A stretch of DNA of 59,341 nt, filler included, from Platydemus manokwari (Eukaryota): assembly GCA_037951405.1 (NCBI GenBank). It is 5 parts of 5 records of this genome, joined end to end, with 100 filler letters (N's around TTAATTAATTAA, not from the genome) between each part and the next. Parts side by side here need not be neighbours in the genome. Positions count along the whole stretch, not along the records: positions 1 to 12,436 come from JBBMOY010137788.1; 4 more parts are not named here. The stretch is one strand, 5' to 3'. Within the stretch, counting starts at the first letter, position 1; every line of letters begins with the position of its first letter. The notes below the pieces were generated by a model that worked only from the letters and a program-made list of their open reading frames with translations, ran no database searches and was not told where the DNA came from. Below are positions 8 through 8,886 of this stretch, in pieces. A program made the translations under genes and the position numbers.

Positions 8-222
8 ATTGATCACAATATTGATAACAATATCGCTCACGATACCAATAATTTATTTATCACAATATTGATAACAATATTGATCACAATATTGAAAAAA
101 ATATCAACCACAATACCAATGACTATATCGATCACAATACTGATAAAAATATCGATCACAACATTGATAGCAATATTGATCACAAAATTGATTACAACAT
201 CGATCCCAAATTAACGACAATA
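8..222. repeat. Degenerate 12-bp tandem repeat (consensus ATYGATCACAAT), ~18 units
   Basis: Parses as attgatcacaat|attgataacaat|atcgctcacgat|...|atcgatcacaat|actgataaaaat|atcgatcacaac|attgatagcaat...; two units are 11 nt. Confidence 0.85.
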
Positions 223-2399: not shown

Positions 2400-2917
2400 T
2401 GAAGACTTTTGGAATATTCCTTGTAGGTATAGACTCAATTAATGTCAAGGATGTAGGATAGAAATGCAGCCACCAAGGCAGAATCGAAATGGCATTAAGG
2501 AGTATTTCTGATAATAATGATATTACATTGAATTAATACATTAAGGAAAATGGCTCAATTTTTGTAGCATTTCAGCTTAGCCGAAAAGATGATTAGGATT
2601 GTTCGAGATATGGTTGTAACAACTTTGGCATCAGAGAAGCTGGCTTGAGATAAATTATTACCTCGGATAGAATTTATCATCAATGCAACATATCAGAGCT
2701 CAATTCGACATTCTCCTTTTGAAATATTCTTTGGACGACGATTTATTATGCATGGGTTACGATTAAATGAATCATTCCACCACAACCAGATCATCAAAGA
2801 AACGAAAAACCAACTAAAATTGCTGGCTTCAAATTTAAGGAAATTTGATTCTGAAAAAAGAGGTTGTCGAATTTTTGAGATTGCAAACTAAGTTTGAGTG
2901 AAGAAAGAACCACACAA
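2400..2917 (+). mobile_element. Ty3/Gypsy-like LTR retrotransposon integrase relic
   Basis: Translation of ~2580-2745 gives AEKMIRIVRDMVVTTLASEKLA*DKLLPRIEFIINATYQSSIRHSPFEIFFGR, the typical end of the rve core (E..I..(I/V)..M...W...LP...F..N....S...SPFE..FGR). A CxxC remnant (CQGC) lies at ~2443-2454. Contains stops and runs into an N gap. Confidence 0.75.
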
Positions 2918-3266
2918 NNNNNNNNNNNNNNNNNNNNNNNNNNNNNNNNNNNNNNNNNNNNNNNNNNNNNNNNNNNNNNNNNNNNNNNNNNNNNNNNNNN
3001 NNNNNNNNNNNNNNNNNNNNNNNNNNNNNNNNNNNNNNNNNNNNNNNNNNNNNNNNNNNNNNNNNNNNNNNNNNNNNNNNNNNNNNNNNNNNNNNNNNNN
3101 NNNNNNNNNNNNNNNNNNNNNNNNNNNNNNNNNNNNNNNNNNNNNNNNNNNNNNNNNNNNNNNNNNNNAAATGAAAACTTAAAAGTAAATAAAATGCAAA
3201 TACTATTTATAAATATTAAGATAACATTTATTTGTAAAGTAAATAATCGGATTAGTGAAAATTAAA

Positions 3267-3770
3267 TTGATTCACATTATTATTGGCGAGAATAATGATT
3301 GTAATTGCAGTGGTAATCCATTCTCAACAGATTTTACTACTTTAGAAATATCACATGACAGATTATTATTTCTGAGATGTATTTTGTTAGCCGATCCGGA
3401 TGTGCGAATTGCAGAATATTTTTATCAGTGGAGGATGTTTCAAGGATTCGAGGTAGAATAAAAACATTTTCTGTGTTAGTAATCATCGTGTCTCGAGATA
3501 AGATATTTGGATTCCTATTTTTATAGACTGAAGGCATTCTCAAACCTGACTTTATTGTTGACAAGTGAAGTGGCTTTTCTATTTCAGACAAAGTATTTCC
3601 TTTATTTCCACACTATTTATGTTGTGATTTCAATTTAATTACTGGAATATCATTTGTCTGTAATGGATGAGAAATTACATATGAGAAACACATCTCAACT
3701 TTCGAACAGGTGATATCCTGTTGATGATCTTCTTCAATACTTTGTATTGAACTCTCCTCTGATTTCATGA
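3267..3770 (-). pseudogene. Inverted, internally deleted pseudocopy of the 3' half of the 4213-5778 gene
   Basis: The reverse complement aligns by eye to ~5055-5836. ORF 3337-3591 (EIEKPLHLSTIKSGLRMPSVYKNRNPNILSRDTMITNTENVFILPRILE) closely matches the large ORF. It has a frameshift and deletions, including the equivalent of ~5596-5784. Confidence 0.9.
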
Positions 3771-4143
3771 TATTTGCGATCTATATATATCAGCAATGAA
3801 AACAGTTCGAAATGTCATTTTAATATGTGTGCAGGAGTAAATCTTTTCAATGTTGTGTGATTCTAGCAATTTATATGATTTATGGTTTTAATTAAAGAAT
3901 CTCGATCACAATATTATTTATGCATTCCAATTTGGGAGCCATAAGAGAAATATTTACATATCTTTGTGTTACATTCGGAAATAAAAATATAATTGAATTT
4001 TTTAATAATATTAGAAGCCTACATTTAAATATATTTAGCTTTATTTATTGATTTGCCGAATTATTATTATTGTATTCTTCTCGAAGTCTTCAGTGATTCT
4101 CCTGTAAAAGGAAAATCTACGGATAAAATATTCATTGATAAAA

Positions 4144-4168
4144 TGACGTAATCAAATCTTATATAAAA
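4144..4168 (+). promoter_or_regulatory. Possible core promoter of the 521-aa gene: CRE-like TGACGTAA plus TATATAAAA
   Basis: TGACGTAA at 4144-4151 and TATATAAAA at 4160-4168, about 45 nt upstream of an AAAATG start. Weak, because the background is AT-rich. Confidence 0.3.
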
Positions 4169-4212
4169 ATTTGTGAAAATAATAACAAACATAAATAAAC
4201 AACAAACTTAAA

Positions 4213-5778
4213 ATGAATTCAAAAATGCAACAATTGTTTGATGAAATTGATTGTTGTTATAAAGAAATCGATAATATCGACGACTGTATTGAGAATGATC
4301 ACGAATCTCGTATTATTAACGAAATAAATATCGAACAAATCGTAAATGAAAATTCAGACTGGGATATTAATAAAGTGACTGAACAGATTAGAGAGCTCAT
4401 TACATTAGAAAACAATACAAGGAAAAATATTGACGAACTACATGAAATGACATTTGCTTGTATTGACACTAGCTTATCTTTCACAACCCTTCATGAAGAA
4501 TCAATCAATGATAATGATTTTAATGACAGAGACGATTCCAATGATGTTGGACCCATGAAGGATGTAATGACATCAGAACAACATCCAAGAAAAGACATAG
4601 AGGAATTGACACCAACAAATTTCAATTGCATAGGGATTGGCGCACCATTCATAATTCTTCATAAAGAATCAATAAATGATAATGATTTGAATGAAGAGGT
4701 AGTTTCTAATAGTGATGAAAAATGTATGTCAGTAGAGCAGTATTCATTACAAATTATTGAGGAAGTAGATCCACAAGTAAATAATTGCTCAATTATTGAC
4801 CTACCTTTCACACTTCTTCATAACAATTCAATAAATGAAGGCTTTCCCAGTGAAGACTTAGTATCCAAAGATATTCAATCAAATGAAGAATTTATCAGTT
4901 CTGATCTCAATACTTTTACTAAAGTGCAACAATCACCAGTGAAATTATCAACAATTGACTGCTTACCATTCAAAATGGCTTGTGAAGAATCAATAAATGA
5001 CAATAATTACCTCGGAGAGGAACTTTCTCAAAATAATGAACTTTTTGAAGATTTTAAGAAATCAGAGGAGAGTTTAATACAAAGTATTGCAGAAGATCAT
5101 CAACAGGAAATCAACGGTTCAAAAGTTGAGATGCCTTTCTCATCTGTAATTTCTCATCAATCACAGACAAATGATATTCCCGTAATTAAATCAAATCTGG
5201 AAAAAGAAAATGACATAACAAGACTCATTAAGTCTGACAGTGTAAAAAGTGTGGAAATAAAGGAAATAATTTGTGACGAAACTCTAAGTAATGCAGCTTT
5301 ACATACTGTCATTGATAAAAGTAAACCCGAAATAGAAAAGTCACCTCATTTGACAACCATAAAGTCAGGTCTGAGAATGCCTTCAGTCTATAAAAATAAG
5401 AATTCAAAAATCTTATCTCGCGACACGATGATTACTAACACAGAAAATGTTTTAATTCTACCTCGAATCCTTGAAATATCCTCCACTGATAAAAAACATT
5501 CTGCAACTCGCACATCCGGATCAACCAACAAAATACATCTCAGAAATAATAATCAGTCATGTGATATTTCTAAAATAGTAAAATTTGCTGAGAATTCAGT
5601 TTCAGTTGTAAACAACGGTTTTCAGTTTGTTTCTAAAATTCCAAAACTAAAATCAGGTCTTAAGAAGGCAAATCAGAACAAAATTCTTTCTAATAAGTTC
5701 CAAACAATTCATTCAACCGCCCAAAGAACAAAGCATACTCAATTGAGATGCAGTGGTATTCCTAAATTGAAAAAGTAA
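4213..5778 (+). CDS. Intronless 521-aa orphan protein: 4-5 acidic ~55-aa repeats and a basic Ser-rich C-terminus with two SxIP (putative EB1-binding) motifs
   Basis: 1566-nt open frame in very AT-rich DNA. Repeat cores are SFTTLHEESINDND / PFIILHKESINDND / PFTLLHNNSINEG / PFKMACEESINDNN. SKIPKLK (5632) and SGIPKLKK* (5752). An adjacent paralogous pseudocopy exists. Confidence 0.8.
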   Translation: MNSKMQQLFDEIDCCYKEIDNIDDCIENDHESRIINEINIEQIVNENSDWDINKVTEQIRELITLENNTRKNIDELHEMTFACIDTSLSFTTLHEESINDNDFNDRDDSNDVGPMKDVMTSEQHPRKDIEELTPTNFNCIGIGAPFIILHKESINDNDLNEEVVSNSDEKCMSVEQYSLQIIEEVDPQVNNCSIIDLPFTLLHNNSINEGFPSEDLVSKDIQSNEEFISSDLNTFTKVQQSPVKLSTIDCLPFKMACEESINDNNYLGEELSQNNELFEDFKKSEESLIQSIAEDHQQEINGSKVEMPFSSVISHQSQTNDIPVIKSNLEKENDITRLIKSDSVKSVEIKEIICDETLSNAALHTVIDKSKPEIEKSPHLTTIKSGLRMPSVYKNKNSKILSRDTMITNTENVLILPRILEISSTDKKHSATRTSGSTNKIHLRNNNQSCDISKIVKFAENSVSVVNNGFQFVSKIPKLKSGLKKANQNKILSNKFQTIHSTAQRTKHTQLRCSGIPKLKK

Positions 5779-6210
5779 ACAATAGATTACCACTGGAATT
5801 ACAATTGTTATTCTCACCAATAATAATGTGAATCAATATAATTATAACTATTCTTTTTATTAACTACATTATTTATATTTTATATTTACTTTATAGATTT
5901 ACTTTATATAAGTCATTATTATTATTAGTCTGAAACATTTGGAGGTATGAAAATAATCCTAGAATGCCATTACCAGACATTTCAATAATTACAACGATTT
6001 TGCATGTCGGTTGTAAATAACTAGTTTATTTGTATGTATTCTCTGACTACATCTCTTTTTCCTTACATTCTTAAAGCAGATATTGGTACTATTTGTATTG
6101 ACGTGTGTAAAGTTGTGGATTTTCGAAAACCTCTTAATTCCTTTAGATTTTTTATTTCTTTTTTTCTTTTATTAAGTCACGGTGATAAAAGGACTTTATG
6201 CTTACATTAT

Positions 6211-6785
6211 TACACCTTGCGATTCATAAGGCTCCATCTCTTAAATTAAAATAATATAATAGTAATAACAAACTAAGAGTATTGAGTTACTTTAATGCAC
6301 AACAAAACACAATAACAATAAGAACAAATAACGGTAAATAATAAGCAATTTAATAGTAACTGTTCAAAATCTTCATCATCTTGCTCCAAAAAGAGCTTTC
6401 TGAAGCTTGACTAGCATCTTCGGATGATTTCTTGATTGATGTTTATTAATTCATGTGAAAATGTTTCTTCAAGTCAGCTGAGGGTTGTATAATTGTTATG
6501 GATTGCATAAACTCGATATTCCATATAGCTCCATAACCAAAAGTCCAATATCGTGAGGTCTGGAGATTTGGTGGCCACTTCATTCGTAAGCGAAAATTTA
6601 AAATCACCACTTGCTTCCGCCATATTGTAATAATGCAACTGATTAATAAGAAATAAGAAATAAAGTACATTAATCAGTGAATAATAAATGATAACAATTA
6701 GTATAAATATGCAAGTATAAATTATATTGTGCTTTGTTGTTTTATTTTAGTTTTTGAGACGTAGGCTTATGAATCGCACGGTATA
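6211..6785 (-). mobile_element. Internally deleted Tc1/mariner-superfamily DNA transposon with ~28-bp TIRs and TA target-site duplication
   Basis: Left end TA+caccttgcgattcataaggctccatctc (6213-6240) versus right end gagacgtaggcttatgaatcgcacggta+TA (6756-6785), an imperfect inverted pair. The minus strand at ~6500-6580 reads WPP/KSPDLTILDFWLWSYMEYRVY, the WPPxSPDLxxLDFxLW motif of Tc1/Tc3/maT-like transposases. Confidence 0.85.
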
Positions 6786-8059
6786 TAAAGTTGAATTAAA
6801 TATTTTATCGAAATATCACACATTAAAACAATGAGTATAATTCAGAAGTTTCCACTAGAAAGCTATACTTTACTAACGATTCAGGAATTCCTGAGAGATA
6901 CCAGAAAAAATTAACCATATAAATTTCAGATAAACGAAAGATTTTCCATGAATTCACTGGATCATTAATAATCTAAATCTCAATCAATCGTCAAACAGTT
7001 CTAAACGAAATCTGCCCTTGGAAATATACATGCTGTCAACTGAAATTGCAATCTCAATAGATAGAAACTTATCAGTTTTTCATTCTAGTTTCAACTTTAA
7101 TATCTACTGAACCGCTTATGTGAGACACCAATTAGTTTCCCATGGATATTTGAATGCCGTTATTTATTATCCCTTAATTTCACAATCAATCGATGTCGAT
7201 CCCTTTTTGGTTGTGACGTTATGCTCTACCATTTCTATGACAATGATAATAAATAAATCTGTCAGCAAAAAATATCTGAATGATTGATTTTTATTAGCGA
7301 TACTTACGATTACATAACCAATCATGCATTAATCAACGTAATCAATCGCATCTATTTGAGAAGCAGTTCGAAATGCTATGAGAGATTCAGGAGGATTTTG
7401 GATTGAAAGAATAAAATTGATTTTCCAATAGAAAAAATCAATAAATCAATGTTTTTAAAATGAAGATATTTATAATCAATAATAAAATGTGTTGAAATTA
7501 TATTTCGAGGTATATTAATCCGGAGAATTGATTTATTGGAATAAATACCAGAAAAGTTTCTGAATGAATATACATATATATATATATATAAATAAACTTA
7601 TCTTCTTTCCACATATATACTGAAAATATTTCTGAATGAATGTCCATGAATTCCATTAATAATATTAAAAAGCTCCGAGTTGAACAAAAACCCTCTTTGA
7701 CTGCAGTAAGTAGTGAATAGATTTGTGACATTAGCATACAAGTTATTACCAATGAGGATTTCGATATTTCGAGTTCAAACCTCGTTCAATAGATTATCTG
7801 ATATGACTTAATGTTCTGAATAAATCTGTGAGATTTATTGATTTCATAACACCTTGTGAGGATTTAAAAGATTTCATGAATAAGTTTTATTTATTTTAAA
7901 TTAAATAAATGATTTGAAAACTACTTTTGACGTTCTTAAAATCGGTTTCAATCCTAGTCTAATGGAACAGTAAATAGAGCTGAAAATCTTAAAGTTAATT
8001 GGCTGTAATGATACTAATAAGCAATTTTAGTTATAATAAAATCGTTATAAATTTAAAGC

Positions 8060-8886
8060 ATGATAAAACTTATTATACAATGGGAAAGCGGTTTTTGGCG
8101 AACAGATAGCCACCACATTTTTTGTCAGATGATAATAAAGCCCAACAGCGAAAGAATATGTGGTGAATTTTTAGCCATGCACCAACGGAACGACTTTCTA
8201 TCCCAACTCATAACGGTGGATGAGATGTGGGTATATTTGAACAATGCCAATCGATATATTATCACGACTGATTTTGGTACTGTGCCGATGAATCAATCAA
8301 CAACATCAATTCGTCACACCTTGCAACTGTTTTTTGTGGGATGTGGAAGGAATTTCCCAGTGTGATGTACTTCACAAAGGAAAAAACATAAACGCAGAAA
8401 TTTACTGCACTCAGTTGATTCGATTCGAGAAAAAAAGGCACCCGTTGTGTGGAAACTGTTTTGAAAAGTTCCATTTCCTTCACGATAACGCTCGACTGCA
8501 TATGGTACGTTTAACTCAAAATAAACTTGCTGAGACCGGTTTTGCGGTGATACCGCATCCATCATACTCCCCACATCTTGTCACTTTAGGCTATTATATG
8601 TTTTCTTCTATGAAAACTCACTTCGTGGGAAAACGTATCTCTCCGGTGAACAGGTTAACGATGATTTGGAAAAAGTTTGCTTCAAAACCTGTGGAATTCT
8701 ATGAAAACTCCATCAAACAACTTCCAGAACTCAGGCAAAATTGTGTAGAGCTTAAAGGCGACTATTATCAATATTTCAGATTTACAGTCGAGTGATATTT
8801 TGTTTATATTTCTCAATGTACATATTTTCTTTATTGAGTAAATAAATATTATGTTCTATCGGACAAGACTTTCGTTCTAATCATAT
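8060..8886 (+). mobile_element. Mariner-family transposase pseudogene (frameshifted, 5'-truncated)
   Basis: Two overlapping ORFs carry FLSQLITVDEMWVY (first catalytic D), WDVEGI..LHKGKNINAEIYCTQL, FLHDNARLH (second D) and HPSYSPHLVTLGYYMFSSMK (degenerate YSPDLAPxD). Possible right TIR at ~8860-8886. Confidence 0.9.

What the first reader, a model, noticed from the sequence alone, without database searches (positions are those of the whole stretch)
4213..5778. Intronless orphan gene with an unrecognised ~55-aa acidic repeat and tandem SxIP motifs: candidate lineage-specific microtubule plus-end tracking protein
Seen: an intact 521-codon frame among decayed transposons. There are four full and one partial repeats (T/S-x-E-Q...I-E-E...C...P-F-x-L-L-H-E-E-S-I-N-D-N-D) over ~4400-5180, then a switch to a basic Ser/Thr-rich tail with KSGLRMPS, SKIPKLKSGLKK and terminal SGIPKLKK. 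Known: SxIP motifs in basic, Ser-rich disordered context bind EB1-family proteins. Inferred: an acidic-repeat scaffold or spacer tethered to microtubule ends, which I do not recognise as any named family. Other genes here have short introns, so the lack of introns could point to retroposition or carriage by a mobile element.
Basis: partly seen in the sequence, partly recalled or inferred. Interest (0 to 1): 0.7.

Follow-up and report, generated by a model that had tools for sequence, protein, structure and literature searches.

The report
Flatworm disordered repeat protein, possible microtubule-tip binder
The 521-codon frame is a real, selectively maintained gene of a small, single-exon, flatworm-restricted family of disordered proteins (acidic repeats plus a basic tail that always ends in GIPKxKK); that the tail binds EB1 at microtubule ends is plausible from the motifs but untested.

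Summary
Observation confirmed. Window 4213-5778 (+) is an intact 521-aa frame (chance about 4e-20). It has four ~55-aa acidic repeats plus a degenerate fifth, then a basic Ser/Thr/Lys tail with SKIP (aa 474), terminal SGIPKLKK (aa 514-521) and two KSGL motifs.

It is not a lone orphan. The same assembly holds two long intact paralogs (1446 aa with 13 repeats; 1018 aa without the array), a partial close paralog (68% aa identity, dN/dS about 0.55) and several decayed copies. One decayed copy is an inverted duplicate of this gene's 3' half at 3238-3773.

An exhaustive profile search of 1.84 billion proteins found one outside relative, a 686-aa UniParc protein ending RGIPKLKK. There is no Pfam or PDB match. 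AlphaFold2 predicts disorder throughout. A bestrophin gene linked to a paralog places the source among flatworms; the assembly is a mix of animals.

Every intact family member is a single-exon frame and copy number is low, so retroposition or transposon carriage is not supported.

On EB1 binding: the terminal IP is invariant in seven copies and every intact member has at least one canonical [ST]x[IL]P in an acid-free basic context. However, the Ser of the terminal motif occurs only in this lineage and the internal motifs shift position. The complex prediction gave no verdict and no RNA data exist.

The parts
4213..5778 (+). Complete single-exon coding sequence, 521 aa plus TAA stop
   Evidence: The start Met and the first residues (M-x-S/F-x-x-Q-Q) are shared with paralogs L002 and L013. 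Logan contigs of run X1 tile 3517-6100 with no differences on the main path.
4020..4212 (+). Upstream region (putative promoter/5' UTR) conserved with the closest paralog
   Evidence: The DNA match to C1779662 begins at window 4020 and runs to about 5004 at 79% identity, so it covers 193 nt upstream of the ATG.
4213..4392 (+). N-terminal acidic segment shared with the family (I-V-x-E/Q-x-S-D ... D-I/L)
   Evidence: Alignment A1. L022 and P0001 carry the longer form, which includes S/T-S/I-D-W-L.
4387..5040 (+). Four acidic repeat units of about 55 aa (4387-4551, 4555-4719, 4714-4878, 4876-5040); conserved core L-P-F-x-I-L-x-K-E-S-I-N-D-N-D-F-N-E-E-V-V
   Evidence: In a 21-unit alignment the Ser of E-S-I-N is invariant and L, I and N are at least 90% conserved. 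AF2 on a unit with that alignment gives pLDDT 56 and no secondary structure.
5119..5181 (+). Degenerate fifth repeat unit (core M-P-F-S-S-V-I-S-H-Q-S)
   Evidence: Read from the translation and from its position in alignment A1; below the profile threshold.
5317..5775 (+). Basic Ser/Thr/Lys-rich tail (aa 369-521), predicted disordered
   Evidence: Charge profile, composition K 14% and S 13%, pLDDT 25-34.
5359..5391 (+). Family-conserved motif I-K-S-G-L-R-M-P-S-V-Y (L-x-x-P-S/T, a partial resemblance to the LxxPTPh EB-binding motif)
   Evidence: Identical apart from R/K in L013; reads K-S-G-L-R-L-P-T-A-S in L022. The LxxPTPh comparison is a resemblance only (PMC6122986).
5632..5667 (+). S-K-I-P-K-L-K-S-G-L-K-K: canonical SxIP followed by the second KSGL motif
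   Evidence: No acidic and four basic residues within +-9. The aligned paralog sites read SGIP in L022 and SKVA in L013.
5752..5775 (+). C-terminal S-G-I-P-K-L-K-K; family-wide terminal motif x-G/S-I-P-K/T-x-K-K/R
   Evidence: Terminal motifs: SGIPKLKK (window, L025), FGIPKSKK (L013), RGIPTFKK (L022), RGIPKLKK (P0001), YGIPKLKM (L026), YSIPKLKRM (L017).
5779..5865 (+). 3' UTR segment conserved among family copies
   Evidence: 92% identity to C1323951, 80-81% to C1619295, C1141354 and C1189000, and 85% to the inverted copy at 3238-3322.
3238..3773 (-). Decayed inverted partial duplicate of the gene's 3' half (equivalent to 5051-5865)
   Evidence: Inverted repeats I1-I4 and I6 are 85-94% complementary. 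Relative to the gene it lacks about 38, 52, 1 and 185 nt, the last removing the SKIP...SGIPKLKK coding end, and it carries a TAA. A 1277-nt contig (3727-5003) bridges the junction. An assembly gap (N, 2918-3168) lies just to its left.

Best explanation
SHOWN. This is a real protein-coding gene kept open by selection. It is a short member of a small, single-exon, flatworm-restricted family of intrinsically disordered proteins. Family members share four elements: an acidic N-terminal part, a basic Ser/Thr/Pro/Lys tail, a conserved K-S-G-L-K/R-x-P motif, and an invariant C-terminal x-G/S-I-P-K/T-x-K-K/R. In one subfamily (this gene, C1779662, C1299983) a ~55-aa acidic segment with the hydrophobic core L-P-F-x-I-L-x-K-E-S-I-N-D-N-D-F has been amplified in tandem: 4 to 5 copies here and 13 in the 1446-aa paralog. 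The locus has undergone a local inverted partial duplication. Its 3' part appears to have exchanged sequence with the closest paralog.

INFERRED (about 0.3). The protein acts as a multivalent adaptor. The basic tail would dock onto the EBH domain of an EB1-family protein, and/or onto the acidic microtubule surface, through its SxIP-type motifs (SKIP at 474, terminal SGIPKLKK). The tandem acidic L-P-F motifs would present several copies of a short linear binding site for a partner. This would make it a functional analogue of lineage-specific EB1 cargo adaptors such as insect Sentin, not a homologue of them.
For: Real and selected gene:
- Chance of the open frame is about 4e-20.
- The closest paralog is 82% identical in DNA yet also open. 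179 random substitutions would create about 9 stops, and none of 5000 simulations had zero stops.
- pS 0.33 against pN 0.19, Z = 3.4, dN/dS about 0.5.
- The start codon and N-terminus are conserved.

Family:
- Paralogs found.
- Outside relative P0001 found by the word search at E = 1e-25 and confirmed pairwise by BLASTP at E = 4e-33.
- Nothing else among 1.84 billion representatives.

Disorder: AF2 mean pLDDT 31 for the whole protein and 56 for the repeat unit. The Atlas model of P0001 has pLDDT 0.37.

Flatworm origin: the bestrophin gene on the paralog's contig has Protopolystoma and Macrostomum as its best named hits.

For EB binding:
- Two canonical SxIP motifs in acid-free, basic context (P = 0.016 by shuffling).
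- Each intact relative has at least one canonical [ST]x[IL]P in such a context: TKLP in L013, SQLP and TQLP in L022, SKIP in P0001.
- The terminal IP is invariant in seven copies.
- Insect Sentin likewise tracks plus ends through its last 142 aa. This depends on a TGIP motif and on the last 12 residues (PMC3115803).
- Both the window protein and P0001 have the same arthropod clusters, including 'ssp2' (Sentin), plus the GTSE1_N and CKAP2 families as nearest neighbours by language-model features. Scores are only 0.84-0.85, so this is a lead only.
- Three EB1 genes exist in the assembly.
Against: - No expression data: no RNA run holds the sequence.
- The Ser at position 1 of the terminal motif is replaced by F, R or Y in the other lineages, and SKIP(474) is SKVA in the 1446-aa paralog. 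Aptamer screens show a strong preference for Ser and tolerate a deviation only in an optimal context (PMC3967968).
- [ST]x[IL]P arises easily in Ser/Pro/Lys-rich disordered sequence. In L013's tail the count is not significant (P = 0.10).
- There is no detectable sequence homology to any known +TIP.
- A basic C-terminal tail could equally be a nuclear localisation or nucleic-acid-binding element.
- dN/dS of 0.5 is weak constraint.
Confidence: 0.3

Rival explanations
1. A nuclear or chromatin-associated acidic-basic disordered protein. The basic Lys-rich tail, including the terminal P-K-L-K-K, would serve as a nuclear localisation or nucleic-acid-binding element. The acidic repeats would bind basic partners such as histones. 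The SxIP matches would be incidental.
For: Bipartite acidic/basic charge layout. Complete predicted disorder. The most conserved terminal element is I-P-K-x-K-K rather than S-x-I-P. No homology to any microtubule protein.
Against: There is no classical K-K/R-x-K/R cluster longer than two residues at the terminus. The invariant G/S-I-P before the lysines has no role in known import signals (my own knowledge). Language-model neighbours are microtubule-associated families rather than chromatin proteins (weak).
Confidence: 0.2
2. A disordered scaffold or multivalent adaptor acting in some other flatworm-specific context (for example cilia or germ cells). The conserved K-S-G-L-K/R-x-P and terminal G-I-P-K-x-K-K would be ligands for a partner other than EB1.
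For: K-S-G-L-K/R is better conserved across the family than SxIP. The family is lineage-restricted. Repeat number varies from 0 to 13 between paralogs, as is typical of fast-evolving multivalent scaffolds.
Against: No positive evidence for any particular alternative partner. The I-P dipeptide in a basic context is the hallmark of EBH ligands (PMC3967968).
Confidence: 0.3
3. A retrocopy, or a gene carried or captured by a mobile element, as the reader suggested from the lack of introns.
For: The frame is a single exon. Transposon remnants lie nearby (mariner-type at 8057-8792). An inverted repeat flanks the 5' half of the gene.
Against: All intact family members are single long frames, so there is no intron-bearing parent. 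No poly(A) tract follows the stop. There are only a few loci in a 911-Mb assembly. No transposase or RT domain is present in or next to the frame. The 'inverted repeat' is a decayed copy of the gene's own 3' half.
Confidence: 0.05
4. A non-functional relic: a recently duplicated, rearranged short copy that is still open by chance.
For: It is the shortest family member and lacks the conserved helix-like segment (G-I-Y-x-L-A-x-K-E-E-E-N-L-K-K-H) of the long members. It sits in a rearranged locus next to a decayed inverted duplicate. dN/dS of 0.5 is weak constraint. No RNA evidence.
Against: Two copies that differ by 18% in DNA both remain open, where about 9 stops are expected. pS is significantly above pN. 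By contrast, copies that are clearly dead show indels and stops.
Confidence: 0.1

Closest known systems
Sentin / ssp2 (Drosophila EB1 cargo protein)
   Same: Both are large proteins with no recognisable domains and a narrow lineage range. Sentin's plus-end tracking maps to its C-terminal 142 aa, needs a T-G-I-P motif, and also needs the last 12 residues (PMC3115803). Here there are x-G-I-P motifs in a basic tail, one at the very C-terminus. An arthropod 'ssp2' cluster is among the nearest language-model neighbours of two family members.
   Different: No detectable sequence homology: the HMMER profile search over 1.84 billion proteins returned only P0001. The Atlas scores of 0.84-0.85 are in the range that shuffled sequences often reach. 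Sentin has no tandem acidic L-P-F repeats as far as I know. I could not obtain a Sentin sequence to compare directly.
SxIP-motif +TIPs in general (APC, MACF, CLASP, GTSE1, DDA3/PSRC1, SLAIN2)
   Same: [ST]-x-[IL]-P embedded in a basic, Ser-rich, acid-free, disordered region, often in tandem copies (PMC3967968).
   Different: This class is defined by a short motif plus experimental EB binding, not by homology, and binding is untested here. The Ser at position 1 is not conserved in the family's terminal motif.
LxxPTPh / 'PT' EB1-binding motifs (Kar9, NOD)
   Same: The family-conserved G-L-R/K-M/L-P-S/T-V/A-Y/S has Leu at position 1, Pro at position 4 and Ser/Thr at position 5, with neighbouring basic residues. 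Variants of the motif still bind Drosophila EB1 (PMC6122986).
   Different: Position 6 is V or A rather than Pro. The match is partial and was compared by eye only.

Membership tests
SxIP-type microtubule tip localisation signal proteins (EB1 cargo) | At least one [ST]-x-[IL]-P motif | tested here: met
   SKIP at aa 474 and SGIP at aa 514. Two observed against 0.22 expected in the tail, P = 0.016.
SxIP-type microtubule tip localisation signal proteins (EB1 cargo) | Motif lies in a basic, Ser/Pro-rich, acid-free, disordered context | tested here: met
   0 acidic and 4-6 basic residues within +-9 of each motif. pLDDT 25-34 over the tail.
SxIP-type microtubule tip localisation signal proteins (EB1 cargo) | Motif conserved in relatives | tested here: inconclusive
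   The terminal I-P is invariant in 7 copies, but position 1 is S only in the window lineage (F, R or Y elsewhere). The site aligned to SKIP(474) is SGIP in L022 and SKVA in L013. Canonical motifs occur in every intact member but at shifting positions.
SxIP-type microtubule tip localisation signal proteins (EB1 cargo) | Direct binding to the EBH domain of EB1 and EB-dependent plus-end tracking | not testable with these tools
   The complex prediction gave no verdict. This needs pull-down or ITC and live imaging.
Sentin/ssp2 family | Sequence homology to insect Sentin | tested here: not met
   The exhaustive HMMER profile search found only P0001 at E <= 0.001. The only link is language-model similarity of 0.84-0.85.
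Any curated protein family (Pfam, PDB chains) | Significant profile match | tested here: not met
   Pfam: nothing below E = 2 for the window protein, and nothing for L013, L022 or P0001. PDB profile searches were blank.
Processed retrocopy | Intron-containing parent gene, poly(A) tract and target-site duplications | tested here: not met
   All intact paralogs are single frames of 1018-1446 aa. No poly(A) tract after 5778. Target-site duplications were not systematically searched.
Transposable-element gene | High copy number, terminal repeats of the element, transposase/RT/integrase domain | tested here: not met
   About 8-10 loci with any similarity in 911 Mb. No such domain. The inverted arms are the gene's own 3' half.

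The most novel reading that the evidence does not exclude
Flatworms have evolved their own non-homologous counterpart of the insect Sentin and vertebrate SLAIN2 class of EB1 cargo adaptors. In this reading, a disordered protein family is anchored to EB1 through a C-terminal G-I-P-K-x-K-K tail (an SxIP variant with a relaxed first position). One subfamily has multiplied an acidic L-P-F linear motif 4 to 13 times to recruit several copies of a partner, for example a microtubule polymerase, to growing ends.
Probability: 0.2. Interest if true: 0.6.

Novelty: new member of a known kind. Interest (0 to 1): 0.3.

Why it matters
EB1 cargo adaptors that control microtubule dynamics (Sentin in insects, SLAIN2 in vertebrates, Kar9 in yeast) are lineage-specific and cannot be found by homology. 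The equivalent proteins in most animal phyla, flatworms included, are therefore unknown. If this family binds EB1, it would give flatworm cell biology a candidate plus-end adaptor. It would also give a natural test of how far the first position of the SxIP motif can vary, because the family keeps x-G-I-P-K-x-K-K at the C-terminus with S, R, F or Y before it. If it does not bind EB1, it remains an ordinary case of a fast-evolving, lineage-restricted disordered repeat protein, of modest interest.

Tried and rejected
- Complex prediction. I folded two copies of the single EBH exon of an EB1 gene from the same assembly (L041:1471-1620) with tail aa 466-521. The result was 'no answer', score 0.02, which is no evidence either way. 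Expression could not be tested. Laying X1's contigs only confirmed the assembly.\n- AF2 models had too low confidence (pLDDT 31 and 56) for any fold search, so none was run.\n- Organism identification through COX1 failed. The assembly carries at least four different full-length animal COX1 genes, 64-87% identical to each other.
Full report
**1. The observation**

The window holds an ATG-to-TAA frame of 521 codons at 4213-5778 on the + strand. An in-frame stop lies six codons upstream. The window is 71% A+T, so a random codon is a stop with probability 0.081. A 527-codon open stretch therefore has a chance of about 4e-20.

The repeat finder reports four direct DNA copies spaced 168, 159 and 162 nt apart across 4476-5040. 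At protein level these are four ~55-aa units sharing a core L-P-F-x-I/L-L-H-K/E-E-S-I-N-D-N-D, and a degenerate fifth unit lies at aa 303-323.

Net charge is -3 to -8 per 40 residues up to about aa 360 and +2 to +9 after that.

**2. Surroundings and local history**

The inverted copy is dead. Relative to the gene it lacks about 38, 52 and 1 nt. It also lacks about 185 nt (5596-5780) that encode the SKIP...SGIPKLKK end, and it carries a TAA. An assembly gap (N, 2918-3168) lies just to its left and was not touched.

Contigs of the one public run that holds this sequence (coded X1, probably the source sample) tile 3517-6100 without differences on the main path. One 1277-nt contig (3727-5003) bridges the junction between the inverted copy and the unique 5' half. 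The arrangement is therefore not a scaffolding artefact, although this is not independent data.

The only verified transposon remnant is a broken mariner-type transposase at 8057-8792 (Pfam Transposase_1, E = 2e-6).

**3. It is a family, not a lone orphan**

Six-frame searches of the window's own assembly (911 Mb in 1.99 million contigs) found the following copies:
- C1779662: a partial copy cut by the contig end, 68% aa identity over 351-358 aa and open throughout.
- C1323951: probably the 3' end of that copy, with an identical H-T-Q-L-R-C-S-G-I-P-K-L-K-K stop.
- C1299983: a single 1446-aa frame with 13 repeat units and the same tail motifs, ending F-G-I-P-K-S-K-K.
- C1742509: a single 1018-aa frame without the repeat array, ending R-G-I-P-T-F-K-K.
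- Decayed copies on C1433769 (ends Y-S-I-P-K-L-K-R-M, with stops), C1619295 (ends Y-G-I-P-K-L-K-M, frame broken) and C1859500.

A profile of 21 repeat units finds the unit only in the three repeat-bearing genes plus the C1859500 fragment. DNA searches show fewer than ten loci, so this is not a repeat-family element. A stretch of the 3' UTR is also conserved among copies.

**4. Relatives elsewhere**

- The word-based search with the window protein was blank.
- The same search with the 1018-aa paralog found one protein, P0001 (686 aa, UniParc UPI0006070AF3; E = 1e-25).
- P0001 shares several family blocks with the long paralogs (the BLASTP comparison is with the 1018-aa one): an N-terminal acidic block, the S/T-S/I-D-W-L block, a conserved N-P-L-N-R-T-F-D-R-E block, a G-I-Y-x-L-A-x-K-E-E-E-N-L-K-K-H block, and the terminus R-G-I-P-K-L-K-K (pairwise BLASTP E = 4e-33).
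- An exhaustive HMMER search with a four-sequence profile against 1.84 billion representative proteins returned only P0001.
- Pfam and PDB-sequence searches were blank.

The family is real but very narrowly distributed in current databases.

**5. Source organism**

The contig with the 1446-aa paralog also carries a bestrophin exon (Pfam E = 3e-51). Its best named relatives are from the flatworms Protopolystoma xenopodis and Macrostomum lignano. I therefore place the source among Platyhelminthes.

The assembly is a mixture. It contains at least four different full-length animal COX1 genes, 64-87% identical to each other. From memory only, three look gastropod-like, one arthropod-like and one flatworm-like; I did not test this. 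It might indicate a predator with prey or a parasite with hosts.

**6. Selection**

Against C1779662, the first 280 codons give pS 0.33, pN 0.19 (Z = 3.4) and dN/dS about 0.5. Placing the observed 179 differences at random creates about 9 stop codons, and none of 5000 simulations stayed open. Both copies are therefore held open by selection, with the weak constraint typical of disordered proteins.

From codon 280 onward the two copies are 97% identical in DNA, against about 80% before it. Codon 280 is also where the inverted duplicate starts. This suggests recent sequence exchange (gene conversion) of the 3' module; that is inference.

**7. Structure**

AlphaFold2 gives mean pLDDT 31 for the whole protein using the three-sequence alignment. 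For a repeat unit with the 21-unit alignment it gives pLDDT 56 and no secondary structure. The Atlas model of P0001 has pLDDT 0.37.

The protein is best read as intrinsically disordered. Its conserved pieces would then be short linear motifs: the hydrophobic-acidic L-P-F...E-S-I-N-D-N-D-F core in the repeats, K-S-G-L-K/R-x-P, and the C-terminal G-I-P-K-x-K-K.

**8. The EB1/SxIP idea**

In favour:
- Both SxIP motifs sit in acid-free, basic, disordered context. Two are seen where 0.22 are expected (P = 0.016).
- Every intact relative has at least one canonical [ST]x[IL]P in such a context near its C-terminus: T-K-L-P in the 1446-aa paralog, S-Q-L-P and T-Q-L-P in the 1018-aa paralog, and S-K-I-P in P0001.
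- The I-P of the terminal motif is invariant in seven copies.
- The conserved G-L-R/K-M/L-P-S/T resembles the second EB-binding motif, LxxPTPh, variants of which bind Drosophila EB1 (PMC6122986).
- Insect Sentin tracks plus ends through a domain-less C-terminal 142 aa, a T-G-I-P motif and its last 12 residues (PMC3115803).
- Language-model neighbours of both the window protein and P0001 are the same arthropod clusters, including 'ssp2', plus the GTSE1_N and CKAP2 families. At scores of 0.84-0.85 the tool itself calls these leads only.

Against:
- The Ser at position 1 of the terminal motif is found only in this gene's lineage; it is F, R or Y elsewhere.
- SKIP(474) is S-K-V-A in the 1446-aa paralog.
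- The internal canonical motifs are not at aligned positions.
- Aptamer selection shows a strong preference for Ser at position 1, with single deviations tolerated only in an optimal context (PMC3967968).
- Such four-residue motifs arise easily in Ser/Pro/Lys-rich sequence.

Three EB1 genes exist in the assembly. I folded two copies of the single EBH exon of one of them with tail aa 466-521. The test returned no verdict, so it counts neither way.

I put EB-dependent tip binding at roughly 0.25-0.3.

**9. Retroposition or mobile element**

This is not supported. All intact family members are long single frames, so there is no intron-bearing parent. No poly(A) tract follows the stop. Copy number is low. 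No transposon domain is present in the frame.

**10. Verdict**

The gene is real and belongs to a previously unannotated, flatworm-restricted family of disordered proteins. Its lineage-specific acidic repeat array is confirmed. The +TIP reading is a reasonable hypothesis with mixed motif-conservation evidence and no functional data.

Novelty is modest: a new lineage-specific candidate within the known class of motif-defined EB1 cargo, or simply a fast-evolving disordered repeat protein.

Noticed in passing
window 8-209: A 12-nt minisatellite (consensus ATTGATCACAAT, about 17 copies, 69-75% matches). It reads in one frame as N-I-D-H-N-I-D-N repeats and lies at the very start of the contig.
   Followed up: no
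window 8057-8792 (+): A mariner-type transposase remnant split over at least two frames (Pfam Transposase_1 E = 2e-6, DDE_3 E = 0.01). It contains the H-D-N-A-R-L-H stretch.
   Followed up: partly
window 2649-2888 (+) and 6449-6746 (-): Short open frames that look by eye like the C-terminal part of a retroelement integrase and a piece of a Tc1/mariner-type transposase. Neither gave a Pfam match, so this is unverified.
   Followed up: partly
G000 contigs C1514745, C1389203, C1344449, C1440324, C43481 (L044-L048): The assembly carries at least four different full-length animal COX1 genes (64-87% aa identity; all open under the invertebrate mitochondrial code). It is therefore a mixture of several animal species, not one genome. 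Which one belongs to the flatworm was not established.
   Followed up: partly
L013 720-1652 (-): A 310-aa single-exon piece of a bestrophin chloride-channel gene lies about 1.5 kb upstream of the 1446-aa paralog, in divergent orientation. Its best named relatives are flatworm bestrophins.
   Followed up: yes
window 5051-5287 versus L002 1-237: DNA identity to the closest paralog jumps from about 79-80% to 95-97% exactly at codon 280, the same point where the inverted partial duplicate begins. This suggests gene conversion or a shared recombination breakpoint.
   Followed up: partly
L026 (C1619295), about 1480-2190 in locus coordinates, minus strand: A decayed, much shortened family copy. It keeps the N-terminal acidic block and a tail ending K-K-I-P-K-L-R-P-Y-G-I-P-K-L-K-M, and lies near an exon that looks like aldehyde dehydrogenase.
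   Followed up: partly
L041, L042, L043: Three EB1-family genes (EBH domain, Pfam PF03271, 44-65 bits) occur in AT-rich contigs of the assembly. All have the EBH domain on one short exon flanked by introns, unlike the intron-free family studied here.
   Followed up: partly
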